DNA of 64,000 bases from Laetmonice hystrix (Eukaryota), in the NCBI GenBank assembly GCA_965235115.1, contig OZ249436.1, forward strand, positions 14,942,001 through 15,006,000. Direction: 5' to 3'. Shown piece after piece: positions 2,366-39,355 of this stretch. The notes beneath the pieces are model-generated. The model did not search any database. It saw nothing but the letters and a program-made list of their open reading frames with translations, and was not told the origin of the DNA. Position numbers and translations under genes: made by a program. Position 1 is the first letter of the stretch, and each line of letters starts with the position of its first letter.

Positions 2366-3248
2366 TTAGAACAGGCGCATAGCAGCGACACCTGCCGTGA
2401 GCAGCAACACCAGAGATCCTGACACGGACACTGCAGCATTCTGCCCCTGGAAATGTAGACACACATATACATGCTATTAATACCCACATAATTGGGTCAA
2501 TTTATAATACAAAGGAACCCTCTGGAAACCATAAGAAACAATACACACATATATGCCGATAACTATTGCCCCCTTTGAGGATTATCCCATTAATAGGTCG
2601 ACTATGTCGATTGTATTGTTACATTATCATGACCCGCTCACCTGAGTAGTGTTTGTTGCGGCTGCGGTTGTTGCTTCCATGGTGGTGACGGCAGCGTTGG
2701 TGACGGCGGCGTTGGTGACGGCGGCGTTGGTAACGGCGGCGTTGGTGGCACCGTCAGCGGTGGCCGCGGCCGTTACAGCGTCAGTGACTGTGGGGACGAC
2801 GGTACTCGTTGATCCCTCGCATCCAGCTGAAATTTTTATGATGAAGGAATTATTTCTCTTTTAAGAAAAAGTCAAATGAATTGAAAATTTCAGTTAAGCT
2901 GTTTCCTGCCTGTGTTGCGGATTTCACTTCAGTTGGCCTATTTCTGTATTAACTGTTTGTCGGATACCTGATGTTTGTTTTGCGTATGTAGAGGCATTGA
3001 GCTCTGATATATATTAGGCGTATGGCTTTAAACCACCACGTAGAGGTTCTGTAGGTATTATAATCCCGAATCCAATGGTTTGACCCCCCCCCCAATTTCA
3101 AATGTAATGTACTTTAGCAGGTATCTTATCAGAAGGTCTATGAGAAAGGTCTATATCAAACACGTTTATCAGTTGGTCAGATGATTTGAGTTTCCTTACC
3201 GAAGTATGCGATCAGGGAAACAGCGATCAGGGCAGCGACAGACTTCAT
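2366..3248 (-). CDS. Small putatively GPI-anchored Thr/Ala-rich glycopeptide, tandem copy 1 (104 aa)
   Basis: Coding exons 3248-3200 (MKSVAALIAVSLIAYF+G, donor GTAAGG), 2826-2642 (AGCEGSTSTVVPT...ADGAT(NAAVT)4TMEATTAAATNTTQ, TTTCAG/GTGAGC) and 2446-2366 (GQNAAVSVSGSLVLLLTAGVAAMRLF*). Phases 1 and 0 join in frame. Non-coding exon donor at 3560, TATA at 3613-3621, AATAAA at 1888-1883. Confidence 0.88.
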
Positions 3249-3612
3249 GATTGGGTTATGTTGTGTTGTGGAGCTTGAGTTTAGCGGTCGCTGCAAATCA
3301 AACATATTCAGTTCATATCTAGTTATTAGTTCTCCAAAGCAAAAGTAGCCACAATTCCAATCCAAATTGTGACGTGGTAATCATGAACTAAACAACTTTC
3401 CAAGCTAACGCATGAGTAGTATTGGCTGTGAAATGTTCTTGTGTATTAAGTATTAGACGGTAAGTGAGGAGAGTCAGCCAGTTATGAGAGATACCCCATG
3501 CTGGTACAACAGGTATCACTAATGTTGACTGTGTTTCCCATGGTCTCTTCGTATACTCACTGTTTCAATGGCTCCAGTCGGCTGTTTGCTGTCCCTTCTT
3601 GGACTCCCCCAC

Positions 3613-3621
3613 TTTTATATA
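3613..3621 (-). promoter_or_regulatory. TATA box of tandem copy 1 (TATATAAAA)
   Basis: About 55 nt upstream of the non-coding-exon donor; same position in copies 3 (13681), 4 (17793), 5 (22050) and 6 (28116); damaged in copy 2. Confidence 0.7.
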
Positions 3622-5696: not shown

Positions 5697-6351
5697 ATAG
5701 ATAGATAAATCTATAGTCTTTATTAGAGTGAAATGTGTGCATGTAGTACAGTACCTAACAAACATGACCAAACATCAACAATTTGCTAGTCACACCCAGC
5801 CCACTTGGGCTTACAAGTCACTTTATACCGAAAGTTATTCATTGATCTCTAAGTCACATGAGGAATATATACAAATTAATTATAGATAGCTTTTCGTCTT
5901 CTAAGGAAAGCATTTTTAAGCACGTCTTTACTCATTAATACAATCAACTTCTCTCTCTCCCCTTTAGACTTGAAGAACCAGGGTTATCCTCCAATACGTC
6001 TGACAATAAAATTTCTCTTAAATCTTCATAAAGATTACACTGTAGCAGAAAATGAGCTTCCGTCTCACAAATGTTATGGTTACAGAACAAACATAGCCTA
6101 AATTCAACTGGAATGTTTTGATACCGTCCAGTTTCAATTTTACTGATAACGTTCCACTTCTAAATTGGGCCAAAAATAATCGCTTTGATCTATTCATCAC
6201 TTGACAAACATAGGGTTCAATTGCATAGGCATCCTTGTAGGTACGATAAATTCTCACAGGTCTCACAGGCCCAATTTATTTCAATAGGTGTTTCATTGTT
6301 AAAAGTCAAATGAAGTCCAATCTCACCAAATATCTGGCAGAACTGTAAATT
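5697..6351 (-). mobile_element. 5'-truncated LINE (L2/CR1-group) 3' fragment
   Basis: Frameshifted RT C-terminal region (LAQFRSGTL / IETGRYQNIPVEFRLCLFC...ETEAHFLLQC), AATAAA and an (ATCT)n tail; 7-bp TSD AAAATAA at 5690-5696 and 6352-6358; absent from the homologous spacer at about 11050. Confidence 0.85.
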
Positions 6352-6499
6352 AAAATAATTCGGTTAGGATCCGATTGGTCGCCGACGTCTCCTGGACAAG
6401 CCGACTATCAACTGATACCTAATAACTTTAGGTATACACCAGCGATCTCGGCAGAGGGATCGGCTATAGGGCAGCCGACGAATCGGATAAAAAAAATGT

Positions 6500-6775
6500 G
6501 TGATCTAGCCTGTATCCCCCTACAAATTTTTAAAATTTAAGAAGTCCCGGCACATGACGTCATGCGGCACATGCAGATCCGCGTATACGAGTATCAATAT
6601 GGCTACCAAGTTTCATTGGGATATCTTGACAAATAAGCGAGACTTACTACGACTACTACTGCTACTACTACTACTACTACAACCACCACCACTGCTACGC
6701 CCATGATAATAGGGCAGACGAAACCACACAATTTCATAATCCCATTCCCCCATCAGCGGGAATGGGATAATAAGT
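6500..6775 (+). mobile_element. Non-autonomous element with (ACT)n microsatellite and 3' hairpin (Helentron/HINE-like); second copy about 11240-11500
   Basis: ACT microsatellite at about 6645-6695; hairpin CCCATTCCC...GGGAATGGG at 6741-6766 followed by ATAATAA. The class assignment is inference. Confidence 0.45.
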
Positions 6776-7384: not shown

Positions 7385-8292
7385 TTAGAACAGGCGCATA
7401 GCAGCGACACCTGCCGTGAGCAGCAACACCAGAGATCCTGACACGGATACTGCAGCATTCTGCCCCTGGAAATATAGACACACATATACATGCTATTAAT
7501 ATCCACATAATTGGGTCAATATATTATAATACAAAGGAACCCCCTGGAAACCATAAGAAACAATACACACATATATGCCGATAACTATTGCCCCCTTTGA
7601 AGATTATCCCATTAATATGTCGACTATGTCGATTGTATGGTTCATTATCATGACCCGCTCACCTGAGTAGTGTTTGTTGCGGCTGCGGTTGTTGCTTCCA
7701 TGGTGGTGACGGCAGCGTTGGTGACGGCGGCGTTGGTAACGGCGGCGTTGGTGGCGCCGTCATTGGTGGCGCCGTCAGCGGTGGCCGCGGCCGTTACAGC
7801 GTCAGTGACTGTGGGGACGACGGTACTCGTTGATCCCTCGCATCCAGCTGAAATTTTTAAGGTGAAGGAATTATTTCTCTTTTAAGAAAAAGTCAAATGA
7901 ATTGAAAATTTCAGTTAAGCTGTTTCCTTCCTGTGTTGCGGATTTCACTTCAGTTGGCCTATTTCTCTACTAACTGTTTGTCGGATACCTGATGTTTGTT
8001 TTGCGTATGTAGAGGCATTGAGCTCTGATATATATTAGGCGTATGGCTTTAAACCACCACGTAGAGGTTCTGTAAGTATTATAATCCCGATTCCAATGGT
8101 TTGAACAAATTTCGATTCTTGACCCCCCCCCCCCCCCAATTTTAAATGTAATGTACTTTAACAGGTACCTTATCAGAAGGTCTATGAGAAAGGTCTATAT
8201 CAAACACGTTTATCAGTTGGTCAGATGATTTGGGTTTCCTTACCGAAGTATGCGATCAGGGAAACAGCGATCAGGGCAGCGACAGACTTCAT
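7385..8292 (-). CDS. Same family, tandem copy 2 (104 aa; one NAAVT unit replaced by NDGAT)
   Basis: Exons 8292-8244, 7847-7663 and 7465-7385; GT-AG sites intact; no stops or frameshifts. Confidence 0.86.
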
Positions 8293-12578: not shown

Positions 12579-13293
12579 TTAGAACAGGCGCATAGCAGCG
12601 ACACCTGCCGTGAGCAGCAACACCAGAGATCCTGACACGGACACTGCAGCATTCTGCCCCTGGAAATATAGAGACACATAAATGCTATTAATATCAGGAT
12701 AATTGGGTCAATTTCTAATACAAAGGCAGCCCCTGGAAACCATAAGAAACAATACACACCTATATGCCGATAACTATTGTCCCCTAAGAGGATTATCACA
12801 CTAACAGGGAACCACACAACTATGTTGATTGTATGGTTCATTATCATGACCCGCTCACCTGAGTAGTGTTTGTTGCGGCTGCGGTTGTTGCTTCCATGGT
12901 GGTGACGGCAGCGTTGGTGACGCCAGCGTTGGTGACGGCGGCGTTGGTGACGGCGGCGTTGGTGGCGCTGTCAGCGGTGGCCGCGGCCGTTACAGCGTCA
13001 GTGACTGTGGGGACGACGGTACTCGTTGATCCCTCGCATCCAGCTGAAATTGTTATGGTGAAGGAATTATTTCTATTTTTAAAAAAAATGTCAAATGAAT
13101 TGAAAATCCACGTGAAGCCGGTTCGTGTCGGTGTTGCTGTCTTACATTTCAGTTTTTGCCTAGTTCTGCATATTTACTGTCGGAAGGGTTAAGGAAATAT
13201 CAAACACGTTTTATCAGTTGGTCAGATGATTTAAGTTTCCTTACCGAAGTATGCGATCAGGGATACAGCGATCAGGGCAGCGATAGACTTCAT
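12579..13293 (-). CDS. Same family, tandem copy 3 (104 aa; MKSI..., ADSAT, NAGVT variants)
   Basis: Exons 13293-13245, 13043-12859 and 12659-12579; intact splice sites and frame. Confidence 0.87.
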
Positions 13294-15013: not shown

Positions 15014-16692
15014 GTCACTCGCGTTGTGGCGCGCCTTATAATGACATTCGGACGGAGATTCTACTTCAGTCAGTAATCCGGGAGTAAGGGCATGTTCACA
15101 CTGAGAATTTCTGTCTGTAAATACCTGCTACAGCGGGAGCGCGCTTGGTAACGTGCTTACCCGAGGTAAGTTACCCGAGTGCTGCCGAGATATCTCGGGT
15201 GGAGGAAAGGAATAGCTCTCTTACCTCGGGTAGCGGCAATGTGAACACGGGATATGCCGAGATTAGGCACCAGGGGGCATTACGAGCGGCCGAAATGTTT
15301 GAATGAATAAAAATGTTGTCAAGTTATATTTTGACAATTGTACTTTGTTTATATATTAGTACATGTCGGAGTACTATACTATTTTACACATATATCTGAC
15401 ACAGAACAAGACCATTTACCTAGGTTTGTCAACAATATGAAATGCCCCTTCTTAAAAAAATGTAGGCCTATTATCAAGGAATCAACCCGCAACTCTACAG
15501 TTTATTAAACGCTGGGCCAAATTCAGCGTATCTCCTTTTATCTAATAATACATCAAATTTACTCGATTATATTTGATAAAAATCCTTCGCCTCCACGTGA
15601 CAAGTGATTTAACATTTCGACAAAATTAAAGGTCTGCCAGTAATTTACCTTGGTAGTGGCTTAGGAAACAGAGGGGATGGCTCCCACTCAATAGTTAGGG
15701 GGAGCCAGAGTATGTCTGCCCCCCCCCCTCCCCCAATATTAATGCTCCTGGAAAAGGAATATTATAGGGGTATACATCTTCATAGCTTTCATAAATAATG
15801 AAAAAAGGTGGCCAAATATGAGTAAGTTATTTTGCATAGAGGTATGACCAGATGAATTTCTATACTAAACTATCACATCCCCATTAGACCTCCGGAACAC
15901 CGAAGTTTGTCAAGTCAATTTTTCTTATTCAGTTATCAGATCGATGTCACAAATAGGCACGGGTATGTCATGAACACAATGACTCAATATTCTTTGAACT
16001 TTATTTAATCTTGGTTTAGTTCTCGCATAGCCTATAGCTTGTTGACGAAGTCTTTTTGGTTCTCGTTCGACTATCACATGACTGAACGAGGGGGGGGGGT
16101 CAATCTGAACGCTGAACTTTATCAGACCTTATCAGTTCTGCCGGCCGAAGCTCTGCCGAGGAATCATCAGTCATGACAAACGGGGATGGATTTTGTTTTA
16201 AGATGTTTATTTATATACAATGTAATAAGTCATGCAACAAGTCCCGGTTTTTCATTCAATCCTCGATGCTGTCAGATGTCACTACCCTTATCAACATTAT
16301 CCGGCCTGGTGCAGTGCCTGTTGTTGATTATTGTCAACATTGTGTCGACGCTTCATGCCCAACAGATAAATGTCATTTCAGCGTCGATAAGAACTGCAGT
16401 ACCGTACTAATATTTCCAGGGTCTCCTGTGAGAAAAGATGCTATCCTGACAGGAGTGTGGTCCACCAATAACAGCTCGATAACCTGATCCAAACACAAGG
16501 CTCCAAGTCAACTTCGTAATTGCTATTTTAAAATGCCAGTTTATCACAATTTGACCAATCCACATGGGGTGCTGCTGACTTCATAATCTCTCCCCGATGT
16601 GTTCGCCAGTTTCTTTGATGTACTGTTCTTCAGGGAATCCGTCGGCTCACAGACGCTGTGAAAGCTTCCGTTGTGGAGGTCGAGGTAGTAAC

Positions 16693-17407
16693 TTAGAACA
16701 GGCGCATAGCAGCGACACCTGCCGTGAGTAGCAACACCAGAGATCCTGACACGGACACTGCAGCATTCTGCCCCTGGAAATAGAGAGACACATACATGCT
16801 ATTAATATCAGGATAATTGGGTCAATTTCTAATACAAAGGCAGCCCCTGGAAACCATAAGAAACAATACACACCTATATGCCGATAACTATTGTCCCCTA
16901 AGAGGATTATCACACTAACAGGGAACCACACAACTATGTCGATTGTATGGTTCATTATCATGACCCGCTCACCTGAGTAGTGTTTGTTGCGGCTGCGGTT
17001 GTTGCTTCCATGGTTGTGACGGCAGCGTTGGTGACGGCGGCGTTGGTGACGGCGGCGTTGGTGACGGCGGCGTTGGTGGCGCCGTCAGCGGTGGCCGCGG
17101 CCGTTACAGCGTCAGTGACTGTGGGGACGACGGTACTCGTTGACCCCTCGCATCCAGCTGAAATTGTTATGGTGAAGGAATTATTTCTATTTTTAAAAAA
17201 TGTCAAATGAATTGGAAATCCACGTGAAGCCGGTTCGTGTCGGTGTTGCTGTCTTACATTTCAGTTTTTGCCTATTTCTGCATTAACTGTCAGAATTAAG
17301 GGTTAAGGAAATATCAAACACGTTTTAACAGTTGGTAAGATGATTTGCGCTTCCTTACCGAAGTATGCGACCAGGGAAACAGCGATCAGGGCAGCGACAG
17401 ACTTCAT
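16693..17407 (-). CDS. Same family, tandem copy 4 (104 aa)
   Basis: Exons 17407-17359, 17157-16973 and 16773-16693; intact. Confidence 0.87.
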
Positions 17408-19001
17408 GATTGGGTTATGTTGTGTTGTAGAGCTTGAGTTTAGCGGTCGCTGCAAATCAAACATATTCAGTTCATATCTAGTTTTCCAAAACCAAAGTAG
17501 CTACCATTTCAATCTCGGGCAATATACCGTATATCCAAATGTGACGTGGTAATCATGAACTAAACAAATTTCCAAGCTATAACGCATGAGTAGTATTGGC
17601 TGTGAAATGTTCTTGTGTACACATATTAAGTATTAGACGGTAAGTGAGGAGAGTCAGCCAGTTGTGAGAGATACCCCATGCTGGTACAACAGGTATCGCT
17701 AATGTTGACTGTGTTTCCCATGGTCTCTTCGTATACTCACTGTTTCAATGGCTCCAGTCAGCTGTTTGCTGTCCCTTCTTGGACTCCCCGAGTTTTATAT
17801 AGGAGGACATGAATTCTGGTTGCCATAACACAAACACGACAGGAATAATACCCTTAGTCGTTTTGATTTGTTGCATATCGCCAGGAGATTATCCTGTGAA
17901 TTGTAACTCATACAATATACTATAAGCTACAAGAGCGTCGCGAAACGAAGTGTTTCACAGCTGGGTAGGTATAATTCGAGGATTTTCCAGACCTGTGTGC
18001 CATCTACCGTAAACGCTAGTGCTTAGTGTTGATTCTTCTATGCCTCTCTTGCGACGGCGATGATTAGGCCTTTTACTAAGGGATGTTTTCATTAGCTACC
18101 GTATTGCCGCACTTTTAGGCGCATGTGCCTATAAGTGAGCATGCGCCTATGCCCAGATATAGGCGCATGCGCCTATATCTGACGATTTTTGATTTTGAAA
18201 TTTCCGTAAAAAATGTAAAAGTCCGCTTATAGGCGCATGCGCCTAAACGTGCGTCAATATGTATGTTTGCTACCACTTTGTGAGCACCGTGTTTAAAAAA
18301 TGGGGGAGGGTCTCCACTTAAAAAACCGCCCCGTCCCCTGACCCCGCCCCCGCGGAGAAACGCTTATTTCCTGTTAATTCTTGTTTAATGTTGGCTCTTT
18401 TCCTTAAATTAGAAATAATCCAAGCGTATAAACACAATAATAACGGGATTCGGCTCCTTCACGTGGGAAAATAATTAGGCCTATGGAACGAGATGGCTGG
18501 CGCATGAATACGGGAGGACACCGAAGGTTTCTCCCTCATATGGGATCACTGACCTCCAAGGCTACAGTCTGTCCCCGCTAACTTGAGCCTAATGCATAAT
18601 CATGATATATGCAAGGTCAGCTTTGTTGACTGCCGGCTGTCGGCCAACGTGTAGAGAGGCGAGCACATGGTTTGACCAGCTGCCGGACACTGACACTCAA
18701 CCTGTGTGATTGTGCACACTGGTTTGAATGACAGGCCCCTCCTCTCCCCCATTGGCCGGTATTAGGTTACGTCAGCACTGAGCCAACCCACACCGCTGAT
18801 GAGACCCAGCTCCGGGATCAAGTTAGCGCAGACAGAATGTAAGTATAAAATTCGTACGAAGTAAAAGCAAATATTGAGCAACGGTTTTATCACAGTTTCA
18901 GTAACAGGTGGTCAGAAATCAGGGACATTAAGACACTAGGCCTAAATGATTAAAGCATTTCTATGCTCACACAAGTCAGGCCTATGACTGGTGCAACTAC
19001 T

Positions 19002-20849: not shown

Positions 20850-21672
20850 TTAGAACAGGCGCATAGCAGCGACACCTGCCGTGAGCAGCAACACCAGAGA
20901 TCCTGACACGGACACTGCAGCATTCTGCCCCTGGAAATATAGACACACATACATGCTATTAATGTCCAGATAATTTATAATACAAAGGTGGACCATGAAA
21001 ACCGTAAGAAACAATGCACGTGCACCTCAGGCGCATGTCCGGGGGGGGGGGGGGTCCCTGCTCAGAGCCCCCAATTTGTTATTTATAGGTTGGGGCTTTC
21101 ACCGCCACATCGTCGACCCCCGCCACCCAGCGAAAAATCCTGCACATGCGCCTGTACCTTTATGCCAATAAGGATTATCACACTAATAGTGAACCACACA
21201 ACTATGTCGATTGTATTGTTACATTATCATGACCCGCTCACCTGAGTAGTGTTTGTTGCGGCTGCGGTTGTTGCTTCCATGGTGGTGACGGCAGCGTTGG
21301 TGACGGCGGCGTTGGTGACAGCGGCGTTGGTGACGGCTGCGTTGGTGGCGCCGTCAGCGGTGGCCGCGGCCGTTACAGCGTCAGTGACTGTGGGGACGAC
21401 GGTACTCGTTGACCCCTCGCATCCAGCTGAAATTGTTATGGTGAAGGAATAATCTCTCTTTAAAAAACATGTCAAGTGAATTGAAAAATCATGTGAAGCC
21501 GGTTCGTGTCGATTTAACGATTTTACATTTCAGTTTTTGCCTATTTCTGCCTGAACTGTCAGAAGGGTTAAGGAAATATCAAACACGTTTTATCAGTTGG
21601 TCAGATGATTTAAGTTTCCTTACCGAAGTATGCGATCAGGGAAACAGCGATCAGGGCAGCGACAGACTTCAT
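20850..21672 (-). CDS. Same family, tandem copy 5 (104 aa)
   Basis: Exons 21672-21624, 21426-21242 and 20930-20850; intact. Confidence 0.87.
21028..21154. mobile_element. Short hAT-like MITE in intron 2 of copy 5; degenerate homolog at about 27132-27220 in copy 6
   Basis: 11-bp TIR CAGGCGCATGT; explains the longer intron 2 (311 and 281 nt versus 195-199 nt). Confidence 0.6.
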
Positions 21673-22879: not shown

Positions 22880-24410
22880 ACGGCAAACACTATAGTGAGG
22901 GCACTCGACATGTATTGACTGGCCGCCGCCTGGACCTAACACTACAGTGAGGGCTGCCAACATGGACTGACTGGCCTTATACTGGAGCAAACACTACAGT
23001 GAGGGCTCCCTACATGTATTGACTGCTCTTGGGCTAGAGCAAACACTACAGTGAGGACTCCCTACATGTATTGAGTGACCTTGGGATGGAGCAAACACTA
23101 CAGTGAGGGTTCTTTAGATGTATTGACAGGCCTCAGACTGGAGCAAACACTACAGTGAGGGCTGCCCACATGGACTGACTTGTCTTATACTCGAGCAAAC
23201 ACTACAGTGAGGGCTCCCTACATGCCTTGACTGGCCTTATTGTCGAGCAAACACTACAGTGAGGGCTCCTTGCATGTAATGACTGGCCTTGGGCTAGAGC
23301 AAACAGTACAGTGAGGGCTCCCTACATGTATTCACTGGCGTCATACTCGAGAACACACTACAGTGGGGGCTCTCTACATGTATTGGCTGGCCTTAGACCG
23401 GAGCAAACACTACAGTGAAGGTTCCCTACATACATGTATTGACTGCCCTTGGTCTGGAGCAAACAGTACAGTGAGGGCTGCCCACATGGACTAATTGGCT
23501 TTATACTCGAGCAAACACTACGGTGAAGGCTCCCTATATGTATTGACTGCCCTTAGGCTGGAGCAAACACTATAGTGAGGGCTCCCTACATGTATTGACT
23601 GCCCTTGGGCTGGAGCAAACACTATAGTGAGGGCTCCCTACATTATTGACTGGCCTTATACTCAAGCAAACACTACAGTGAGGGCACTCTACATGTATTG
23701 ACTGGAGGAAACACTACAGTGAGGGTGCCCACATGGACTGACTGGCCTTATACTCGAGGAGACACTACAGTGAGGGCTCCCTACATGTATTAACTGGCCT
23801 TATTGTCGAACAAACACTAAAGTGACGGCTCTCTACATGTATTGGCTGGCCTTAGACTGGAGCAAACACTACAGTGAAGGCTTCCTTCATGAATTGACTT
23901 CCCTTGGGCTGGAGCAAACACTACAGTGAGGGCACTCTACATGTATTGAATGGCCTCTGCCTGGAGCAAACACTAGAGTGAGGGCTGCCAACAAGGTACT
24001 GAGTCGCGTTATACTCGAGCAAACACTACAGTGAGGGTTGCCCACATGGACTGACTGGCCTTATACTTGATCAAACACAGTGAGGGCTCTCTACATGTAT
24101 TGACGGGCCTAAGACTTGAGCAAACACTACATTGAGGCCAAACAGTACAGTGAGTCGTCCCTACACTACTGGCTACCGTTGTATGCAAGCAAACACTACA
24201 GTGAGGCCAAACAATACAGTGAGGGCAAACAGTACAGTTAGGCCAAACAGTACGTAGAGGAGGCCCTAAATGGTACTGGCTAGTACCCAAGTAAACAGTA
24301 GAGTGAGGCCAAACAGTACAGTGAGGCCAAACAGTAAGGGAGGCCAAACAGTACAGTGAGAAGTCCCTACATAGACTGGCTGGTCTAGTACCCAAGCAAA
24401 CAGTACAGTG
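22880..24410 (+). repeat. 52-bp minisatellite (about 24 units) grading into 18-bp units
   Basis: Core AGCAAACACTACAGTGAGGG recurs at 22986, 23038 and 23090 (52-bp period); GAGGCCAAACAGTACAGT 18-mers after about 24120. Confidence 0.9.
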
Positions 24411-25148
24411 AGTTAGTGGAAATGAAAGGTATAGGCGATGGGCATCTATTGTTAAAATTTGGAGAAGATACTCAAATGGGAAGTATATATTTCACAACCA
24501 TTTATCTGTAGCGAACGTACGTGACGGAAATGTTTTACAGTTATTTTGAATACTTTCCAGAAGCACACGATATTTATACAATGCCAACACATGGAGGTAG
24601 TCATATTACATGGTTTTGATATAGAAATACTCCGATGCCCCTTAAACAGTGAAGACTGAAGTGCTCTCTTTTTTATGAGCGAACGTACGTGACGAATACC
24701 ATGCAAATATTCCAGTAGCGAATTACAATACCAGATATGCATACAAACATTGGAAAAATGACCTAATATTATGTAAAATAGATGTATTTAGCATTTTAAA
24801 TCATTCCCTGACCAGTACAAGCATATGTGTGCACACTGAAGGATGTAGCAGTGGCATTCAGAGGAAAATTTTCAAGGAAAATCACATATTTGTGCATTTA
24901 AGTGAATTCTCTAAAGATGCAATTTTTGCATTTTTGATGTTTTTTGTCATTCCGATGATTTTGTAATATTTTTCAATAAAAAAACGTACAAATAAAGGTA
25001 GCAATTGTGTTCTGTTATCACAACCATGTTTCTTCATGGATATCAGGAGCAAAAAAAAACTTTTATTAAAATGGTTTTACCCTCATTTTTCATGGAAAAC
25101 ATGAAATTCAATAAGGCCGCCATGAGGTCACGTTACCGTGTCATTAAG
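24360..25148 (+). repeat. Dispersed repeat; reverse-complement fragments at 35281-35580 and about 36780-37155
   Basis: For example, 24600-24668 is the reverse complement of 35281-35370; the repeat ends in GTTACCGTGTCATTAA, a possible TTAA-type transposon end. Confidence 0.7.
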
Positions 25149-25359
25149 GAAAAATGTATTAAAAATGCATTTTTCATGTAGCCTAACTACCAGTACAACC
25201 GATTATAGTGAAAGAATTTTGATAAAACATGGTCTCTTCTTTTTGTGGCAGAGATTCTACAGTCACTCATTTTTCCTTGAAAAAGGCCCAGCAAATAGGG
25301 TTACAGTAAGCTTCACCACGGAAGGGGTTAAATTAACTCTGACTATATAGAAATAAAGG

Positions 25360-26955: not shown

Positions 26956-27751
26956 TTAGAACAGGCGCATAGCAGCGACACCTGCCGTGAGCAGCAACAC
27001 CAGAGATCCTGACACGGACACTGCAGCATTCTGCCCCTGTAAATATAGACACACATATACATGCTATTAATGTCCAGATAATTTATAATACAAAGGTGAA
27101 CCATGAAAACCGTAAGAGAAAATGCACACCTCAGGCCTTCGGCGCTCCTCATGTGGGGCATACACCGGCATATCGTGGACCCCCACCCCCCACCCCCGCG
27201 AAATAGCCTGCACGCGCCTGCCCGATAACTATTGTCCCTTAGTTAGAGGATTATCACACTAATAGTAAACCACACAACTATGTCGATTGTATTGTTACAT
27301 TATCATGACCCGCTCACCTGAGTAGTGTTTGTTGCGGCTGCGGTTGTTGCTTCCATGGTTGTGACGGCGGCGTTGGTGACGGCAGCGTTGGTGACAGCGG
27401 CGTTGGTGACGGCGGCGTTGGTGGCGCCGTCAGCGGTGGCCGCGGCCGTTACAGCGTCAGTGACTGTGGGGACGACGGTACTTGTTGATCCTTCGCATCC
27501 AGCTGAAATTTTGATGGTGAAGAAATTATTTCTCTTTTTTATATAAAAAAAAAACATGTGAAATGAATTGTAACTCCATGTGAAGCCGGTTTGTGTCGGT
27601 GTTGCGGGTTTACACTTCAGCACATGCCTATTACTGCATTAAATGTCAGAAGGGTTAACGAAATATCAAACACAGTTGGTCAGATGATTTAAGTTTCCTT
27701 ACCGAAGTATGCGATCAGGGAAACAGCGATCAGGGCAGCGACAGTCTTCAT
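26956..27751 (-). CDS. Same family, tandem copy 6 (104 aa; MKTV...)
   Basis: Exons 27751-27703, 27502-27318 and 27036-26956; intact. Confidence 0.87.
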
Positions 27752-28794: not shown

Positions 28795-29142
28795 ATGAAG
28801 AGTCCAGGGGAAAAACGATCTATGTCACATTTTACTGATTTGCTAGAAAACGACAAAGAAAATTAAAAACGACTTTATGGACTTAGATCGTTTTCGTCTG
28901 TTGATATGCTGTCCCTATGCTGTACCATTGGACTTGGATCGTTCTTGTTCTGGACGCCGTGGACATAGATCGTTTTGGACAAGGATGCTAAATCATTATA
29001 CCCCCACAGCCAAGGACTCGAATCGAATTGACCTTTTTCTCTTGGGTCACAACAAAGCTTGATCAATAGTCAGGCAGATGGCGCAGTAATCGCCAATCCG
29101 ACAAAGATGTGACATAGATCGTTTTTCCCGTGGACTCTTCAT
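28795..29142. mobile_element. MITE with about 36-bp TIR
   Basis: ATGAAGAGTCCA(G/C)GGGAAAAACGATCTATGTCACAT in inverted orientation at both ends. Confidence 0.8.
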
Positions 29143-29737
29143 ATAGAGGTCTACATGCGACCCCTGAAGTTTAGACTATGTTATCATTGATCAGTAACTC
29201 ATTGTAAAACGACCAAATCACTATCGGCGCTTTGCTGACACTTCGCATTAGGGGTTTTTAGGGGCGCGACGATATGAATGAGGCAGGCGGACTGTCAACA
29301 GGCCATTCAGTCACTGGGGAGTAAAACTAGACAGTATTCAGTTGGGCAGGACGTATGCCCATTCACTCTAGTCAAAGGGTTGATTATGTCCCCTTGACCT
29401 GTTATTTATGGATATGGATAAATAAATATGGATGAAAATAAATATGTAAACCGTTTTTTAAGTTAACCGGTTCAGCAACAACTGGTGACCAAGAGAGGCC
29501 CATAGGCCTGCAGGTGGTGTACCCGAAATCTTGCCGGTCAGCCTTCTTATGCCCATATTCATAATTATAGTGTTCCGAAACTATTATAACCTTATTTGAC
29601 CGTTACATGACACAAAGGTTATAGAATACATGTAGTCTACATTCATTTAGCTTTAATTAATACCAACGGGCTCAAAACAAATGTAATATACACGACGAAT
29701 GATGCTGAAACCCCATGGTTAATCCAATCTACAAAGA

Positions 29738-29913: not shown

Positions 29914-31086
29914 CATCGTGCCATATATTGACAATCTTTTTATTTTGGTACAGGACATTGCTAATATAGCCACATGTAGTTGCCGAGAATGAATCGGTTC
30001 GACAGGAGAAGTTCTCAGTGACGATCTATTCCCCCAGTTTTGGTTTCATTCAAATTTAATGATTTCTAACTGACGAAACATGCAATAAAGTTATAGTGCT
30101 ACTATCTATCGGGTAGTCATAGAACTAACATATACTATCCACAGTTGTCTCAACGCCACATCGAGTGTCCAGTAAATTAATTGAGGGGACTCGGCTATGA
30201 GATAAACGACGCAATCTCCAGAAAACGTCATGTAGTACTCTTTGAAAAGAACAGATTGTGCAAGGGCAAGCGTCTAATAATCTGTGTGGAAGAGACTTTT
30301 GTCATCTTGTAGGATAGGCCTATCCCACTCACTTCGGCGTCATTGGGCGAAATTTTCCAAGTCCAATGTTCCACTGTCAGGAGTAGGTAATTTTAATGGA
30401 ACAGCCAGCATTGTAAGCGGACCGGGATAATAACACAGGGCATTCCTACGTAATGCTGGACGTTCCATTTTGAAATGACCTAGGCCTACTCCTCTCAGTG
30501 GCCAATAGAAATTTGAATATTTCCGTCAGGTACGACGCCGGGGCAAGTGGGATTTTCCCGTTTCTGATACCTCGATGACAGGACGGGTAGAATTCAAGTG
30601 TTCTCTAATATTTAGGTGCTTTTGTTTATCAAAGATCTTTTCTGAATATATCAACTATAATTTTATAAAGGATTAATCTATCCCTAGGGATATTTAAAAA
30701 AAAATGACTCGGCCAATATTAACCATCGGCCTCGGTTATAATGGGGGTTGAAAGGGGAAACAGTTGTAGATACATGTATACCCTTTTTAATCCCTATATT
30801 TTATTTTTCAAATCCATCAAATCCTTGTCAAAATATCAGTATTTTCATGAGGAAAACAAAGTCACCTTCTGTTTTCTTTCATATGTTTTATTCACAACAT
30901 TTCCAAGTTATATTATAAACCTCTGGTTTCCTTATAGATAAGCACATTCGTAAGTATATGAGCAGTACATTTATATCGAATTAGCATTATGTAGCTTTAT
31001 GTATTCATTTTCTATAAATTAATAATGCCTTCTTTAACATTTCCCTATATTATTAAAGACGTATAAAAAAATAAATACCCCCGAAA

Positions 31087-31735
31087 CCCCTTTCACACTT
31101 GGCGCACGATTAATTGCGACCGAAATGGCCAAATCGGTTGTGCGATCGTCCCAAAAACTTTTGAATCGCAACTGAATCGCAGTAGCTTTCACAAATGCGA
31201 TCGTGTTCGTGCGTCCACATGCGAGTGTTGCACGACCCAGTCGCATACGCTCGTGCGATCGATCGTCACTCGTCACTCGTACAACCAGTGCGACCGATCG
31301 CATGCTCGTGCGACTGGTCGTGCGAGCATGTTTAGGGGAGACCTGTTACACGAGCATGCGATCGCTCGCACTGTTGCACGACTGTTGCACGACTGTTGCA
31401 CGACCTCCGGCCGATCATGTACGCGCTTGTAGTCGCACATGATCTCACACAGTCGCATAATGGTCGCACAACGTTGCACGATGAGGTGCGACTTGTCGCA
31501 CAACAGTCTCATGGTCGCAGGACACATTTTCCAGGTCGCACGACTGATCGCCAGTGGTCGCTAGCACTCGTGCGACTGTTGCGCGACCTCCGGCCGATCA
31601 TGTGCGAGCTTTCAGTCGCACATGATCGCACGCGGTCGTGCGATCGATCGCATGACCGTCTGCAACGGTCATGCAACGGACTGCCATAATTTTGGTCGCA
31701 CCAAGTCGCCTCTGAATTTTTGACAGGTTTTCAGT
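31087..31735. mobile_element. CpG-rich truncated DNA-transposon/MITE arm in the 3'UTR of paralog 7
   Basis: Starts CCCCTTTCACACTT (Harbinger-like end); many CGATCG/GTCGCAC motifs; internal duplication at 31398 and 31580; no matching second TIR. Confidence 0.55.
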
Positions 31736-31772
31736 CACGACCTTTCTGTCTATAGTGACGACGACGAGTAGT

Positions 31773-32573
31773 TCACACGACCTGGGAGACGCTGACGACT
31801 GCCGCGATGAGAACAGTCACCGATCCTAGAACCATCCCGGCACCGTTCTGGGCCTGCATGGGTCGAAGAAAATGAGAGATGAACCAAAAGATGAAATAAG
31901 TTTCTAAGTGCTCGTATTTTCATATTGGCGCCAACCACATCTTTTGTTAAGGCAGAGTAAACAAATTGAACCAAACATGTCTGTCGTTACTGTAGTTCTT
32001 CATGACACGTTTCTCTATAAGCCTAGCAAACGTTTAGAAATGTATTTTTGTTGTCTGCAATAAAGCTTTATCGACGTCAACCATATTGTTTTCTTGATTC
32101 TAATATGAAATAATAATCAGAGAGAAGCCTACCTGTGTTGTGATTTCTCCTACTCCAGTGTTGGTAACGGCTGTTGCGGTCATACTTTCGGTGGCAGTCG
32201 GCGCAGTGCTGTTGTCTGTTGTGAAGGTTTCTGTAGTGGCAGTGGCAGAATCTGTGGCAGAGCCTGCTGTCGTTGGAGGGGCGCTGGTCGTGGCAGTTTC
32301 ACATTCAGCTACAACAAGAAAGTACCGTTAACGGAAATGTCTGAGAACAAAGGTCCTATACACCTTTAAAGAATTATGTGAGGTTTATTTTTGGTAACTC
32401 TCTAAGAACAGTTTCACCGTCAATCTGTCCATGTCGTTAGTCTCATACTGTAGGCTTACATGGTTTCTACAACCTAAAGATAATTGTACAGTACTGTGTT
32501 TTATTTGTAGACTATAGTACTCACCAAAGAAGACAACAATAGCGACGGCGGTGAGGATGGCGATGGTGTTCAT
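31773..32573 (-). CDS. Diverged paralog 7 (101 aa): signal peptide, Thr-rich region, GPI-like tail
   Basis: Exons 32573-32525 (MNTIAILTAVAIVVFF+G), 32308-32133 (AECETATTSAPPTT...DNST...EITTQ) and 31853-31773 (AQNGAGMVLGSVTVLIAAVVSVSQVV*). Same phases as copies 1-6; 5'UTR acceptor at 32597, donor at 32790. Confidence 0.82.
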
Positions 32574-33764: not shown

Positions 33765-34559
33765 ATGAACACCATCGGAGTTTTTTCTGTCGTCCTCATC
33801 GTTGCATTCTTTGGTGAGTACATGTAGCCCTATGCATTTCATTCTCAAAAGAGTCTTACTTTTGTGTACTTATCCAACCAAGTCCCTCTGTTCTAAGACT
33901 TCTTGCTTTTGATTTTGTTTTACCCATAAAGGATACCTTATCTCGGCCATGTCGCTGTATTTGAGCTCCCCTCACGAGTATTCCTAATAAACCATCCGCT
34001 CTAATTCCTGTGTTATTCCTCGTCTAAAGGTTTTTTTTCAATTTAAATGAAAAATAACGTCTAATTCAACATTTTTATGGATATAACTTGTGGTGTTCGT
34101 ATAGGTGGATGTGAAAATGCCACCACAAACGGCCCAACAACGGCAGTTGTCTCAAGCATAGATCCAGCGACAGTGGCAGTAGGCTCTACCACAGACAACA
34201 TGGCATCGGCTGCTACTGGCACTGTTGAGGCCACCACCGCTGCAGGAAACGCAACAGATGCAACAACGCAGGTTAGTTTCATCTTGAACCCGCAATGATA
34301 AAAATGTCAAACTTCATACTGCTATAGATCGCTTCCATTTTCCCGCTATTTTCAGCCAGGGGAAAGACAATCAATTTCAAAACGTTTGCAAGAATCATTC
34401 GCTAAAATCATTTACTCTCGATCAATGACTGACTCTTTCCATCCCTTCTTGAATTACTCACAGACCCCGGATTCGTCTCAGAATGGCGCCCACATGGTAA
34501 CAAGCTCTGTCGTCATCGTTGTAGCAACTATTGTCACTACAGCCCTCCTAGGGTGTTGA
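33765..34559 (+). CDS. Diverged paralog 8 (103 aa): signal peptide, Thr/Ala-rich region, GPI-like tail
   Basis: Exons 33765-33813 (MNTIGVFSVVLIVAFF+G), 34105-34271 (GGCENATTNGPTT...GNATDATTQ) and 34464-34559 (TPDSSQNGAHMVTSSVVIVVATIVTTALLGC*). TATA at 33233, 5'UTR donor at 33339, AATAAA at 34899. Confidence 0.83.
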
Positions 34560-35585
34560 CACGTGACAGTGCGTTGAACCAGTCGTAACCAAGCTAGATT
34601 TAAAGACGACACTTTTCTTGTAGTGTAGACGTTAAGATACACACCTATACGTCTTCTATATGTTGGTGTTGCAAGTTGTCTCCAAGCGGACAGGTGCACG
34701 TATGGATAAAACTTTGGTGCTTATTTAGTACGTATAAATTTGATCGGCTCGTCATGGGAAAATTTCTAACAGATATAAAGAAACGATTAAGGTCATTAGT
34801 GTTAAACGCCGAACTAAAAATAATGTACCTGTATGGAGGATAACGCTGGAGAAAACTGGGTGTGTATGTACATGTATAATCCGATTAAGTTGACGATGAA
34901 TAAATTTGAAAGTTTACAAGAACAATCTGTACATACATTTTACTTTCATCTGAGATTGTATATTGGTCAGTGTGAATTTCGAATTAACGCAACCATCGAG
35001 GTTAAATCAGGTATAACCAACCATAAGAGCGCAATCAGAGCCCCCCCCCCTACCCCCAACACCCCCTCATGAATTATTTTCATGTTCCCATCATGCAGTG
35101 CACCGGAAGTTTCAAACTATGAACCTGATTTGACCTTTTGAGGTCAAAAACGTGCCAGAATAGGTACATATTCGTTGCTTTATTTAATGCCCACAACGAT
35201 AAAATTGTTAATATTTCACTCTTTACTGACAAACCATTGTTAATCCATTTTAAAAGTAAAAATTGCAATGTTTGTGAAAAGAGAGCAATTCAGTCTTCAC
35301 TGTTTAAGGGGCATTGAAGTATTTATATATCAAAAAACCATGTAGGCTAATAGTCCTATGACTACCTCCATCTGTTGGCATTGCCAAGTATTCAAAATAA
35401 CTGTAAAACATTTCCGTCACGTATAGGTTCGCTACAGATAAATAGTTGTGAAATGTATACTTCCCATTTGAGTATCTTCTCCAAATTTTAACAGAAGATG
35501 CCCCTCGCCTATACCTTTCATTTCCACTACCTCACTGTACTGTTTGCTTGGGTACTAGGCCAGCCAGTATTATATAGGGACGGAA

Positions 35586-36745
35586 GATGTGTGTAGGGGG
35601 AGGGTCCATTGTCCTGCTCGACCACCAAAGCTCCTTTTTTAGGGGAGTCGCGGTGGCCGAGTGGGCATGAGTGTCGACACCTTATGCTATGCGAATGGGT
35701 GCAGTAATCTTGAGGCCGGGCTCGATTCCTGTAGAGGACTATACAACTTTTCTCTTTAGGGACATTGTCAAAGTAATTGGGTTACCCCTGATGCCCGTGC
35801 ATTTCAAAAGAAAAATACAGTCTACGCCAGTGCCAGGATTACCTTAACAGTCAATGTTCGGTAGAAATCATGTGTAGCTCTAATAGATTCCGTCTCATTT
35901 CAAAAAGATGTGTGTAGGGGGGAGGGTCCATTGTCCTGCTCGACCACCAAAGCTCCTTTTTTAGGGGAGTCGCGGTGGCCGAGTGGGCATGGGTGTCGAC
36001 ACCTTATGCTATGCGAATGGGTGCAGTAATCTTAGGGCCGGGGTTCGATTCCTGTAGAGGACTATACAACTTTTCTCTTTAGGGACATTGTCAAAGTAAT
36101 TGGGTTACCCCTGATGCCCGTGCATTTCAAAAGAAAAATACACTCTACGCCAGTGCCAGGATTACCTTAACAGTCAATGTTCGGTAGAAATCATGTGTAG
36201 CTCTAACTAGGAAAATATGGATTCCATCTCATTTCAAAAAGATGTGTGCAGGGGGGAGGGTCCATTGTCCTGCTCGACCACCAAAGCTCCTTTTTTAGGG
36301 GAGTCGCGGTGGCCGAGTGGGCATGGGTGTCGACACCTTATGCTATGCGAATGGGTGCAGTAATCTTAGGGCCGGGGTTCGATTCCTGTAGAGGACTATA
36401 CAACTTTTCTCTTTAGGGACATTGTCAAAGTAATTGGGTTACCCCTGATGCCCGTGCATTTCAAAAGAAAAATACAGTCTACGCCAGTGCCAGGATTACC
36501 TTAACAGTCAATGTTCGGTAGAAATCATGTGTAGCTCTAACTAGGAAAATATGGATTCCGTCTCATTTCAAAAAGATGTGTGTAGGGGGAGGGTCCATTG
36601 TCCTGCTCGACCACCATTTCAAAAGAAAAATATAGTACCAAAGCTCCTTTTTTAGGGGAGTGGCGGTGGCCGAGTGGGCATGGGTGTCGACACCTTATGC
36701 TATGCGAATGGGTGCAGTAATCTTGGGGCCGGGGTTCGATTCATA
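35586..36745 (+). repeat. Tandem array (about 3.5 units of 321-334 bp) each containing a tRNA-derived head
   Basis: Units start at 35586, 35907, 36241 and 36575; each has A box TGGCCGAGTGG and B box GG(T/C)TCGATTC; the three complete units have TTTT shortly downstream; the cloverleaf is degenerate. Confidence 0.8.
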
Positions 36746-38151
36746 TACAATTGCCTATTTTCAGACTTTCAGCAACTCAAGGTCCAATAAAGTGAAACGA
36801 AATGCATAAATATGTGATTTTCATACGGTATGGAAAATCATAACCTACGTGACGTTAAATATCACCTTTCTCAGTGTGCACAAAATATGCTTGTACTGGC
36901 CAAGGAATAATTTAAAACGCTAAATACATCTGTTGTACATAATATTAGGTCATTATTGCAATGTTTTTATGCATATCTGGTATTGTAATTCGCTACCGGT
37001 ACTGCAATTTTTGCATAGTATTCGTCACGTACGTTCGCTCATAGAAAAGAGGGCACTTCAGTCTTCAGTATTTACATCAAAACCATGTAATATGACTACC
37101 TCCATCTGTTGGCATTATATAAATATCGTGTGCTTCTTGAAAGTATTCAAAATACTTCAATGCAGTCGCTCTTGCTTTCAGTGCAAGCGACGATGAACAA
37201 ATGACCCTCGCTTGTAAAATCCTTGTAAAATGTGGACATGGCACTTAAGGTCATGTGCTACACCTCTCATATCTCGTGCCAAATCTCGCCATAGTAACTA
37301 ATGTATAAAACACAAACCCACTACATATCAATATTTCGTATTTTAAAAGAAAGAACAAGTGTTTTTCAGTTTAAAACTAGACAACTATGTCACCGTGCTT
37401 ATTTTTTTGTAATAAGCCTGGGTTTATAGGAAATGTATGCCTGTGCAAAGCCTTGAATTTACCTTGAAGGCCCCTGATGAGTGTAAGAAGCACTTAAAGT
37501 ACCCAAGACATGGATTTTCTATAGATATTCCACACAAAAGGTAGCATGGCGACATATGGATATTTATACATGTGTACATTGTTATAATCAGAACCACTTG
37601 TTCCTTCTATTAAAATACAAAGTATCGATATGTAATGGGTTTGATTTAGTGTAGCACATGACCTTAAGTCTGAACATCCTTAACGGCAAAGAAAAAACGT
37701 CCAGGAAATGTTTTGAAGACAACCCGAGGCCAACTTCATATTTCAACATTTTTATATTTCGTATGACAAAGCGTCCTGACAGCTCTCTGTACAATTACAG
37801 GGAGCTCGTGGCTACAGGTGGTCAACACATAACGACGTATTGTTGACGGTCAAGTCTATTTGTTTAAACTGTGAAATCAAAGTGTAGACCGCTCTATTGT
37901 GATATATCACCATGATAATAAATAATCCAGTATGCAACCGTTCAAACACAAACCATCTCGTCTACATAAGCAATTAGCAATAGTCTAAGGATATAATATA
38001 ACATTATAATACAATAACTTTTTGCGACATTAAGTGAAATTTATGATAAATAGGTACATGTATAAGCACGGATTCGAATGACAGCATTGTGGTGTATTTC
38101 GTATAAACAAACAAATCTTTATGTAATCTTGCTGTTATCTTTCAGAGAAGT

Positions 38152-39355
38152 TTAGAGGAGGTGAAGGGTGGCAATCGCGACAAGCAGTGGAAAGGTGACG
38201 GATCTGACAACTGTAGCGTCATTCTGGGGTGTGTTTTGCACCTAGAAAAAGACAACAAAACTAATTTTAGACATAGGACTATAATCTAAATAATTATGAA
38301 GTCATTTCCTTTAGGTGTAGAAACATGATAATTCTACGTTTAGCCTCTATCATATGTAATGAGAAGGCTCTCAGAAATCTATGACATGTAATACTAAGAC
38401 AGAAATATGCGCAAGAGGTTCAAAGCAGTATACATGTACATATACTTCTTCTTAGAATCATAATATAATGTATCTATTCAACTTTCCATTTGAACGATTC
38501 TAACCCTTTTGTCGCTTACTGATAGTTCAGACACATAATTTGATAAAGTTAGTCGAATCAGTGAGACATTCTTGACATAAAGAAATATAAGAAATATAGT
38601 TATCATGCCACTAGCTCACGTATCCCTTAGTATAGTTCAGTGAAGCTCACCTGTGCTGTGGTGTCTGTTGTATTTTCTGCCATGGTGGTGGCCCCGTCGG
38701 TAGCGGTAGCGGTAGCGGCCGTGTTGATATCTGTAGGGGCGGTAGTATATGTGGCACCGGCCGCTGCTGCTGTTGTGGCGCTCGTAGTGACACCTTCACA
38801 TAGGCCTACACCTAGAATAAAACAGATTTTTCGTTAGGTAGAACGCATATTTCGATAACTTATGACTCCCCCCCCCCCTTCTGAGATCCAGTGAGGGCTT
38901 CTTTGGCGATTCTGAAAAAGGTACCATTTTTGACAAGTTGCTGGGATCCCTTTTCAGTTGATGACTTTATTAACGGCACATGCCCTTCAGCATATTGAAC
39001 TGCCCCCCAGCGATTTTTGGCAGTGTACTCATTTATTTTATTGATCAGAGTAACAACACTACATGGGCCAAGGCGATGCGCTGAACAATAAACATAGATA
39101 AACAGCAGAGCTCTGTAAATATGAATTGTCAACATTTACTGTCACTTAATCAGAACAGGTGCAAAGGAGAGTACGAGACACACATCATGTGATGATAACA
39201 TTAAAACTTATTAGCATTTTCGTGAATGGTACGCTGAATCATTATTACTGGTGAAAAACAAAACCAAACGGTATAAAATGTTGGCCTATAGCGTACTCAC
39301 CAAAAAAGGCGACCATGGCTAGACCTACGACAGCGGTGACGGCGATAGTTTTCAT
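38152..39355 (-). CDS. Diverged paralog 9 (101 aa): signal peptide, Thr/Ala-rich region, GPI-like tail
   Basis: Exons 39355-39301 (MKTIAVTAVVGLAMVAFF+G), 38811-38651 (GVGLCEGVTTSATT...ENTTDTTAQ) and 38241-38152 (VQNTPQNDATVVRSVTFPLLVAIATLHLL*). TATAAA at 39740-39735, 5'UTR donor near 39657. Confidence 0.83.

What the first reader, a model, noticed from the sequence alone, without database searches (positions are those of the whole stretch)
2366..39355. Nine-member family of tiny, putatively GPI-anchored mucin-like glycopeptides (CD24/CD52-like architecture) largely invisible to the ORF track
Seen: nine spliced genes share one exon plan and intron phases, 101-104 aa length, a hydrophobic leader ending xCE(G/T/N), a Thr/Ala-rich core ending T(T/A)Q exactly at the exon boundary, and QN(A/G/D)A followed by a hydrophobic C-terminus. 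The predicted copy-4 mature peptide is 60 aa with 17 Thr, 2 Ser and 18 Ala, and no Cys, aromatic or basic residue. Every paralog keeps at least one N-X-S/T sequon despite core divergence. Established: signal + short O-glycosylated stalk + GPI signal is the design of vertebrate CD24 and CD52, surface glycan scaffolds. Inference: this is an invertebrate family of glycan-display surface peptides (glycocalyx/mucus, gamete surface or self-marker role); homology to CD24/CD52 is not claimed.
Basis: partly seen in the sequence, partly recalled or inferred. Interest (0 to 1): 0.85.

Follow-up and report, generated by a model that had tools for sequence, protein, structure and literature searches.

The report
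Small mucin-like, probably GPI-anchored peptide genes
The nine tiny three-exon genes are real and under purifying selection, and belong to a family of about 40 genes with no detectable relatives in public protein sets; they encode short, threonine-rich secreted peptides that are probably sugar-coated and lipid-anchored, though no RNA or biochemical data could be obtained to confirm this.

Summary
All nine window genes have intact ATG, GT-AG introns in phases 1 and 0, and a stop codon. They give 99-104 aa products.

The cluster continues left of the window with two more intact copies and one truncated at the 5' end. Profile searches of the genome find about 40 loci at four places on two chromosomes; 34 look intact. 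One of them is a 25-copy array.

Evidence that the genes are real:
- The coding sequence has no indels, while the introns have many.
- dN/dS is 0.1-0.25 within the main type and about 0.4 between subfamilies.
- Copies on different chromosomes are similar only across the three exons.

All subfamilies share one design:
- a hydrophobic leader with small residues at -3 and -1, then an invariant Glu;
- an acidic core of 56-63 aa with no basic residues, 15-22 Thr and at least one N-X-S/T sequon;
- an invariant Q-N-x-A followed by 22-25 residues that end in a hydrophobic tail.

This fits a GPI-attachment signal by the published rules, but a tail-less membrane anchor is not excluded.

No homologue was found in four protein searches, Pfam or the Atlas. 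No RNA run holds these genes, so expression, splicing, GPI anchoring and glycosylation remain untested. The design is a known kind (CD24/CD52, trypanosome mucins) in a new family without homologues.

The parts
2366..3248 (-). Gene c1 (type A, 104 aa). Exons 3248-3200, 2826-2642, 2446-2366.
   Evidence: Model built; GT-AG introns; protein identical to c5 and one conservative leader residue from c4.
7385..8292 (-). Gene c2 (type A, 104 aa). Exons 8292-8244, 7847-7663, 7465-7385.
   Evidence: one five-residue repeat unit of the core is altered.
12579..13293 (-). Gene c3 (type A, 104 aa). Exons 13293-13245, 13043-12859, 12659-12579.
16693..17407 (-). Gene c4 (type A, 104 aa). Exons 17407-17359, 17157-16973, 16773-16693.
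   Evidence: Read base by base; translated.
16206..16211 (-). AATAAA polyadenylation signal of c4, about 484 nt after the stop. The same signal lies 465-488 nt after the stop in all six type-A copies of the window.
20850..21672 (-). Gene c5 (type A, 104 aa). Exons 21672-21624, 21426-21242, 20930-20850.
26956..27751 (-). Gene c6 (type A, 104 aa). Exons 27751-27703, 27502-27318, 27036-26956.
31773..32573 (-). Gene c7 (divergent, 101 aa). Exons 32573-32525, 32308-32133, 31853-31773.
   Evidence: A 91%-identical exon 2 lies at C1:8.627 Mb.
33765..34559 (+). Gene c8 (divergent, 103 aa; the only one on the + strand). Exons 33765-33813, 34105-34271, 34464-34559.
   Evidence: Its exon 2 is 66-71% identical and the whole protein 62% identical to 27 copies on contig C7. 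DNA similarity to those copies is confined to the three exons and short flanks.
38152..39355 (-). Gene c9 (divergent, 99 or 101 aa). Exons 39355-39301, 38805 (or 38811)-38651, 38241-38152.
   Evidence: Two acceptors lie 6 nt apart; the downstream one restores the FFxxCE register of the other paralogues. No other copy in the genome.
17449..17460 (-). Acceptor-like pyrimidine tract plus CAG, 43 nt upstream of the c4 ATG. An equivalent site lies 8-45 nt upstream of the ATG in every subfamily. It may mark the 3' end of an intron in the 5' UTR.
   Evidence: In-frame stops lie between the site and the ATG in u1, c8 and the C1:8.6 Mb copy.

Best explanation
This is a lineage-specific multigene family with about 40 loci, 34 of them apparently intact. 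Each gene encodes a precursor of about 100 aa that enters the secretory pathway. Inferred steps follow. Signal peptidase cuts after a small residue (Cys or Gly at -1, Ala or Gly at -3) and exposes an invariant Glu. The remaining 56-63 aa are acidic, contain no basic residues, are Thr/Ala/Ser-rich and presumably disordered; they carry 1-3 N-glycan sequons and many candidate mucin-type O-glycosylation sites. The last 22-25 residues act as a GPI-attachment signal: GPI transamidase cleaves after the invariant Asn of Q-N-x-A and adds the lipid anchor. The product would be a small, heavily glycosylated, negatively charged peptide held in the outer membrane leaflet, working as a glycan scaffold or hydrated anti-adhesive coat on an apical cell surface. 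Shown here: gene structure, family size, purifying selection, and motif and hydropathy conservation. Inferred: cleavage sites, glycosylation, GPI anchoring, abundance, tissue and role.
For: Gene models are intact with GT-AG introns and conserved phases in 11 of 12 cluster copies, in 2 of 2 copies at C7:29.09 Mb, and in 21 of 25 copies at C7:27.26-27.54 Mb. Selection: exons are 89-95% identical against 67-72% for introns, and the coding sequence has no indels. dN/dS is 0.1-0.25 with dS up to 0.39. It is 0.42-0.46 between c8 and the C7 copies and about 0.4 between subfamilies whose dS exceeds 1.2. Copies on different chromosomes are similar only across the three exons and short flanks. Among the six reading frames, the predicted one has pN/pS 0.20, while four others have 1.5-3.1. 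Design: the leader core has mean hydropathy 2.3-2.8. Residues at -3 and -1 are A/G and C/G. Glu is invariant at +1. The mature part has 0 basic residues, 4-9 acidic residues, 15-22 Thr and at least one sequon. Only Q, N and the Ala at omega+2 are invariant in exon 3, while the tail keeps its hydrophobicity but not its sequence. That is the pattern expected of a cleaved GPI signal as described in PMC10491789. The GPI transamidase subunit genes PIGT and GPAA1 are present in the genome.
Against: There is no transcript evidence. Neither a 5.6-kb stretch nor the last exon plus 3' UTR is held by any run on record as RNA, and the three runs that hold them are DNA without spliced joints. Earlier notes on this genome report RNA support for other genes, so RNA data may exist in which these genes are rare. 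The spacer after omega+2 is 6-7 residues and partly hydrophobic, shorter than the 8-12 hydrophilic residues in the cited rule. The C-terminal 19-residue hydropathy of 1.7-2.3 would also fit a membrane-spanning helix. Pro is scarce (1-3 per core), which is atypical for classical mucin domains. No dedicated signal-peptide, GPI or O-glycosylation predictor could be run. The wobble-aligned antisense frame also shows a low pN/pS (0.25), so the strand rests on splice sites, ATG, stop and poly(A) signal rather than on dN/dS.
Confidence: 0.6

Rival explanations
1. Tail-less type I membrane mucin-like peptides. The C-terminal hydrophobic segment is not replaced by GPI and stays as a transmembrane anchor with no cytoplasmic domain or a 1-3 residue one.
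For: The best 19-residue hydropathy window at the C-terminus is 1.7-2.3, enough for a membrane helix. Several tails end with Arg two or three residues from the end (..MRLF..LLRI..FLRL), which resembles a minimal stop-transfer charge. The spacer is shorter than the cited GPI rule.
Against: The only invariant residues of exon 3 are Q-N-x-A just before the hydrophobic part, with small residues at exactly the omega and omega+2 positions. A plain membrane anchor gives no reason for this. The strongly hydrophobic runs are only 13-17 residues, and subfamilies c7, c8 and c9 have no terminal charge.
Confidence: 0.17
2. Soluble secreted Thr-rich peptides, for example components of mucus, tube or cuticle. 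The hydrophobic C-terminus would be a pro-segment or sorting signal removed before secretion, or the GPI anchor would be shed at once.
For: Large near-identical tandem arrays (9 and 25 copies) are typical of bulk secretory products. The core is acidic, contains no basic residues and has a glycosylatable composition.
Against: No dibasic or other known processing site precedes the tail, and the core has no basic residue at all. The conserved motif matches GPI transamidase rules rather than any convertase site. No abundant RNA was detected.
Confidence: 0.15
3. Not functional genes: repeat-borne open frames kept by recent duplication or gene conversion and never expressed as protein.
For: No RNA holder was found. 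No homologue was found in any protein collection. Six of the 40 loci are defective. The Thr/Ala-rich composition keeps antisense frames open as well.
Against: Synonymous changes are strongly in excess (95 synonymous against 48 non-synonymous, with about 89 synonymous and 223 non-synonymous sites per comparison). There are no indels in 315 nt, while introns carry many. Subfamilies with saturated dS still keep the ATG, both introns in phase, the stop and the three-part hydropathy. Conservation between chromosomes is confined to the exons and short flanks.
Confidence: 0.05

Closest known systems
Vertebrate CD24 and CD52 (small GPI-anchored sialoglycopeptides)
   Same: The design is the same (from my own knowledge of these proteins): a short precursor with an N-terminal signal, a very short Ser/Thr-rich core that is mostly a glycan carrier, and a C-terminal GPI signal. 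Little beyond the signals is conserved.
   Different: There is no sequence homology: the Pfam scan of the exons found nothing and the protein searches found nothing. The core here is longer (56-63 aa, against about 12 aa for CD52 and about 30 aa for CD24). The family has about 40 genes in tandem arrays instead of single genes. The three-exon plan places the GPI-signal region in its own exon.
Trypanosoma cruzi surface mucins (TcMUC/TcSMUG)
   Same: From my own knowledge, with reviews listed: large multigene families of small precursors with a signal peptide, a Thr-rich O-glycosylated core and a GPI signal. Copy number serves to build a dense surface coat.
   Different: They belong to a protist parasite and are intronless. 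No homology is detectable. The annelid core is Ala-rich, contains no basic residues and carries N-glycan sequons.
Plant classical arabinogalactan proteins and AG-peptides
   Same: From my own knowledge: a signal peptide, a short Pro/Ala/Ser/Thr-rich glycosylated core and a GPI signal, in multigene families. JAGGER, one such GPI-dependent protein, appeared.
   Different: Plant cores are Pro/Hyp-rich and glycosylated on hydroxyproline. Here Pro is scarce (1-3 per core), so that chemistry does not apply. There is no homology.

Membership tests
GPI-anchored protein precursor (C-terminal signal as described in PMC10491789) | N-terminal ER signal peptide | tested here: met
   Rule-based only. The leader is 19-21 aa, its core has mean hydropathy 2.3-2.8, and small residues (A/G at -3, C/G at -1) precede an invariant Glu. 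SignalP was not available.
GPI-anchored protein precursor (C-terminal signal as described in PMC10491789) | Small residue at omega (G, A, S, N, D), omega+1 not Pro, small omega+2 | tested here: met
   Omega is Asn and omega+2 is Ala in all six subfamilies; omega+1 is A, G, D or S.
GPI-anchored protein precursor (C-terminal signal as described in PMC10491789) | Generally hydrophilic spacer of 8-12 residues | tested here: inconclusive
   The spacer is about 6-7 residues, ends in Ser-rich positions and also contains V, M and L.
GPI-anchored protein precursor (C-terminal signal as described in PMC10491789) | Stretch of 15-20 hydrophobic residues reaching the C-terminus, with no cytoplasmic domain | tested here: met
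   Hydrophobic ends are 13-17 residues, slightly short in c9. Omega+1 to the C-terminus is 22-25 residues, and nothing follows the tail.
GPI-anchored protein precursor (C-terminal signal as described in PMC10491789) | Unstructured polar linker of about 10 residues before omega | tested here: met
   The residues before omega are rich in T, N, D, Q and S, and this is the most hydrophilic part of each protein.
GPI-anchored protein precursor (C-terminal signal as described in PMC10491789) | Actual GPI attachment (PI-PLC release, loss of the C-terminal peptide) | not testable with these tools
   This needs an experiment. The machinery genes PIGT and GPAA1 are present.
CD24 / CD52 families (homology) | Detectable sequence similarity to the Pfam CD24 or CD52 models or to any member | tested here: not met
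   No Pfam family at E<=1 for exons 2 and 3 of six members, apart from one sub-threshold chance match. There were no protein hits. The exons were searched separately because a spliced product has no reference.
Mucin-type O-glycoprotein domain | Dense Ser/Thr (about 25% or more), usually with Pro, in a secreted disordered region | tested here: inconclusive
   Thr plus Ser make up 31-46% of the mature core, but Pro is only 1-3 residues. Glycosylation itself cannot be tested here.

The most novel reading that the evidence does not exclude
An annelid has independently evolved a trypanosome-like or CD24/CD52-like coat. In this reading, several dozen tandemly amplified genes supply the main GPI-anchored glycan scaffold of an apical cell surface (epidermal microvilli, gut or gametes). 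Selection would act almost only on the two processing sites (x-C/G|E and Q-N|x-A) and on composition. This would be a clean animal case of convergent evolution of minimal glycan-display lipopeptides.
Probability: 0.3. Interest if true: 0.6.

Novelty: new member of a known kind. Interest (0 to 1): 0.42.

Why it matters
Small spliced genes like these are routinely missed by annotation. Here a family of about 40 genes has no counterpart among 1.84 billion representative proteins. If the products are GPI-anchored glycopeptides, they may be a major but unrecognised component of the worm's cell-surface glycocalyx. They would also be a further independent origin of the design 'signal + glycosylated stub + GPI' known from CD24/CD52, trypanosome mucins and plant AG-peptides. 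The family is also a compact natural data set. Six subfamilies have diverged to saturation, yet Q-N-x-A, the -3/-1/+1 positions at the leader end, and a Thr-Thr at the end of the core stay fixed. That makes it useful for studying what signal peptidase and GPI transamidase really require.

Tried and rejected
1. RNA evidence. Two searches for sequencing runs found only three low-coverage DNA runs of one sample. Laying them on the window gave DNA unitigs with no spliced joints, so expression stays untested. Depth was higher over the type-A gene, in line with a multi-copy sequence, but the tool warns that depth is not copy number.
2. Homologues. The search for homologous proteins was run with type-A exon 2, with exon 2 of the C7 array and with an alignment of all subfamilies; it found nothing. 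The exhaustive HMMER search with the c8-subfamily profile gave one low-complexity hit at E 2e-4 in a 516-aa protein, which I rejected. Pfam gave only a sub-threshold RebB match, also rejected. The Atlas feature search scored 0.85 or less, which is not informative.
3. Literature. Four searches for an annelid or invertebrate family of this kind found nothing relevant.
4. Full-length spliced proteins could not be given to any search, fold or look-up tool, because they have no reference and I did not type them. All searches were therefore run exon by exon, which limits their sensitivity.
5. An upstream coding exon. An acceptor-like site precedes every ATG, but in-frame stops between it and the ATG in several members argue that the ATG is the true start.
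6. dN/dS as proof of strand was rejected, because the wobble-aligned antisense frame scores as low.
7. Exon 1 of the leftmost copy u3 was not found within 10 kb, so I treat that copy as truncated.
Full report
**Observation**

On the minus strand at 16693-17407 I read, base by base, an ATG exon of 49 nt ending ..YF+G|GTAAGG. It is followed by a 185-nt exon that starts after a pyrimidine tract and CAG and ends ..TTQ|GTGAGC. An 81-nt exon then runs from a CAG acceptor to TAA. Spliced together they give a 104-aa protein.

tblastn and regular-expression scans found the same three exons in six near-identical tandem units, spaced 4.1-6.1 kb apart. I read the three divergent genes directly. The final models have GT-AG at every intron and phases 1 and 0 throughout. 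Product lengths are 104 aa for c1-c6, 101 for c7, 103 for c8, and 99 or 101 for c9. The c9 gene has two acceptors 6 nt apart.

**The family is larger than nine**

A DNA search of the window's own assembly showed further copies just left of the window. I fetched 60 kb of flank and found two more intact type-A genes. A third copy has intact exons 2 and 3 but no recognisable exon 1 within 10 kb. No other Thr-rich exon of this kind lies in the 124 kb I examined.

Protein and profile searches of the genome gave 40 exon-2 matches and 39 exon-3 matches at four places:
- C1:14.92-14.98 Mb: 12 copies, which is this cluster.
- C1:8.627 Mb: one c7-like copy.
- C7:29.09 Mb: two copies.
- C7:27.26-27.54 Mb: 25 copies at a period of about 7.5 kb.

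I fetched the copies on C7 and rebuilt them. Both copies at 29.09 Mb are intact (100 aa). In the 25-copy array, 21 are intact (107 aa), two have an altered exon-2 donor and two lack the ATG. The C1:8.627 Mb copy has no recognisable exon 3 within 2 kb. In total about 34 of the 40 loci look intact. The tool states that such counts are lower bounds.

**Are they real genes?**

- Exons against introns: among the eight intact type-A copies, the coding sequence is always 315 nt with no indel. Exons are 89-95% identical. Introns are 67-72% identical, with more than 100 gapped columns per pair.
- dN/dS: the Nei-Gojobori ratio is 0.1-0.25, with dS up to 0.39. Fisher p for the five pairs tested runs from 1e-8 to 1e-4 for the most divergent (u1, u2, c4) up to 0.009-0.04 for two near-identical pairs.
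- Between subfamilies: c8 against the copies on the other chromosome gives 0.42-0.45. Subfamilies whose dS is saturated (above 1.2) still give about 0.4.
- Footprinting: blastn of the c8 locus against the C7 loci aligns the three exons with a few tens of bases of flank, plus two short blocks after the stop in the L007 comparison.
- Six-frame control: the predicted frame has pN/pS 0.20 and four other frames have 1.5-3.1. The antisense frame that shares wobble positions has 0.25. The strand is therefore set by the GT-AG introns, the ATG, the stop, and an AATAAA 465-488 nt after the stop in all six window type-A copies.

I consider the gene status well supported.

**Expression is not shown**

No run on record as RNA holds either query. 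The three holders are low-coverage DNA of one sample and show no spliced joints. Earlier notes on this genome report RNA support for other genes (I did not check this). RNA data may therefore exist in which these genes are not abundant, which tempers the idea of a bulk product.

**Anatomy**

All subfamilies share a three-part hydropathy profile.
- Leader: 19-21 aa with a strongly hydrophobic core. A or G sits at -3 and C or G at -1, followed by an invariant Glu. The 25-copy array has Gly where the others have Cys. The Cys is therefore best read as the -1 residue of the signal-peptidase site, not as part of the mature peptide.
- Core: 56-63 aa from that Glu to the Asn of Q-N-x-A. It has 15-22 Thr, 4-18 Ala, 4-9 acidic residues, no basic residue, no Cys, at most one aromatic residue and 1-3 N-X-S/T sequons.
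- C-terminus: in exon 3 only Q, N and the Ala two residues after the Asn are invariant. The following 22-25 residues keep their hydrophobicity but not their sequence.

The published description of the GPI transamidase substrate lists:
- a small omega residue, which may be Asn;
- any omega+1 residue except Pro;
- a small omega+2 residue;
- a hydrophilic spacer of 8-12 residues;
- 15-20 hydrophobic residues;
- a polar linker before omega (PMC10491789).

These proteins meet every point except the spacer, which is only 6-7 residues and partly hydrophobic. One tail (c9) is also short at 13 residues. The PIGT and GPAA1 genes are present in the genome.

**Interpretation**

The most likely reading is a family of small secretory-pathway peptides that are glycosylated on the Thr-rich core and GPI-anchored after the Asn. 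They would serve as a negatively charged glycan scaffold on a cell surface. A tail-less transmembrane anchor or a soluble secreted product cannot be excluded without experiments.

Nothing here speaks to the gamete-surface or self-marker ideas. dN/dS gives no sign of diversifying selection.

**Comparison with known families**

Four protein searches, Pfam, the Atlas and four literature searches found no relative and no description of such a family. By design it resembles CD24/CD52, trypanosome mucins and plant AG-peptides. By descent it belongs to none of them. I rate it a new member of a known kind, of moderate interest.

**Limits**

The spliced proteins have no reference, so I did not type them into any tool. 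All searches were run exon by exon. No dedicated signal-peptide, GPI or glycosylation predictor was available.

Noticed in passing
L010:2126-4164 (G000:C1:8625126-8627164, minus strand): The c7-like paralogue carries a 54-bp minisatellite of about 38 copies. Each unit repeats the last 33 nt of exon 2 plus the first 21 nt of the intron, so the splice donor is present about 38 times. No exon 3 was found within 2 kb downstream.
   Followed up: partly
L008:2443-2854 (G000:C7:29086443-29086854): A 47-bp tandem repeat of 8.8 copies duplicates the 3' end of exon 1 plus its splice donor. This is a second paralogue with a minisatellite born at an exon-intron junction.
   Followed up: partly
window 17449-17460, and the equivalent site 8-45 nt upstream of each ATG: A pyrimidine tract plus CAG, which looks like a splice acceptor, lies before the start codon in every subfamily. 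It suggests an unannotated non-coding 5' exon, or less likely a trans-spliced leader.
   Followed up: partly
window 38805-38811: Gene c9 has two possible exon-2 acceptors 6 nt apart (TAG|GTGTAG|). They would add or drop two residues just before the leader's Cys.
   Followed up: no
window 22883-24137: A 52-bp tandem repeat of about 24 copies lies between genes c5 and c6 and explains the longer 6.1-kb unit there. Further arrays lie at 24186-24412 (102 bp) and 35584-36742 (334 bp, 3.4 copies).
   Followed up: no
window 28820-29203, 30356-30547 and 31124-31700: Unitig depth in the DNA runs is 20-100 times the single-copy level at these places. They are probably high-copy dispersed repeats. The 31.1-31.7 kb stretch is open in several frames on both strands.
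   Followed up: no
G000:C7:27760314-27764041: The gene for the GPI transamidase subunit PIGT (Pfam Gpi16) lies about 220 kb from the end of the 25-copy array on the same contig. This is probably coincidence.
   Followed up: no
window 41852-42394 (-) and 54947-57108 (+): The neighbouring genes are a DHHC palmitoyltransferase exon and a LARP7-like gene (RRM_3/xRRM domain at 56770-57108).
   Followed up: partly
window 16173-16487 (+), with equivalents in the other type-A units: A 98-109 aa open frame lies antisense to the 3' UTR in four of the six type-A units and is shorter (72-73 aa) in c2 and c3. It has no Pfam match. It is probably kept open only because the duplications are recent.
   Followed up: partly
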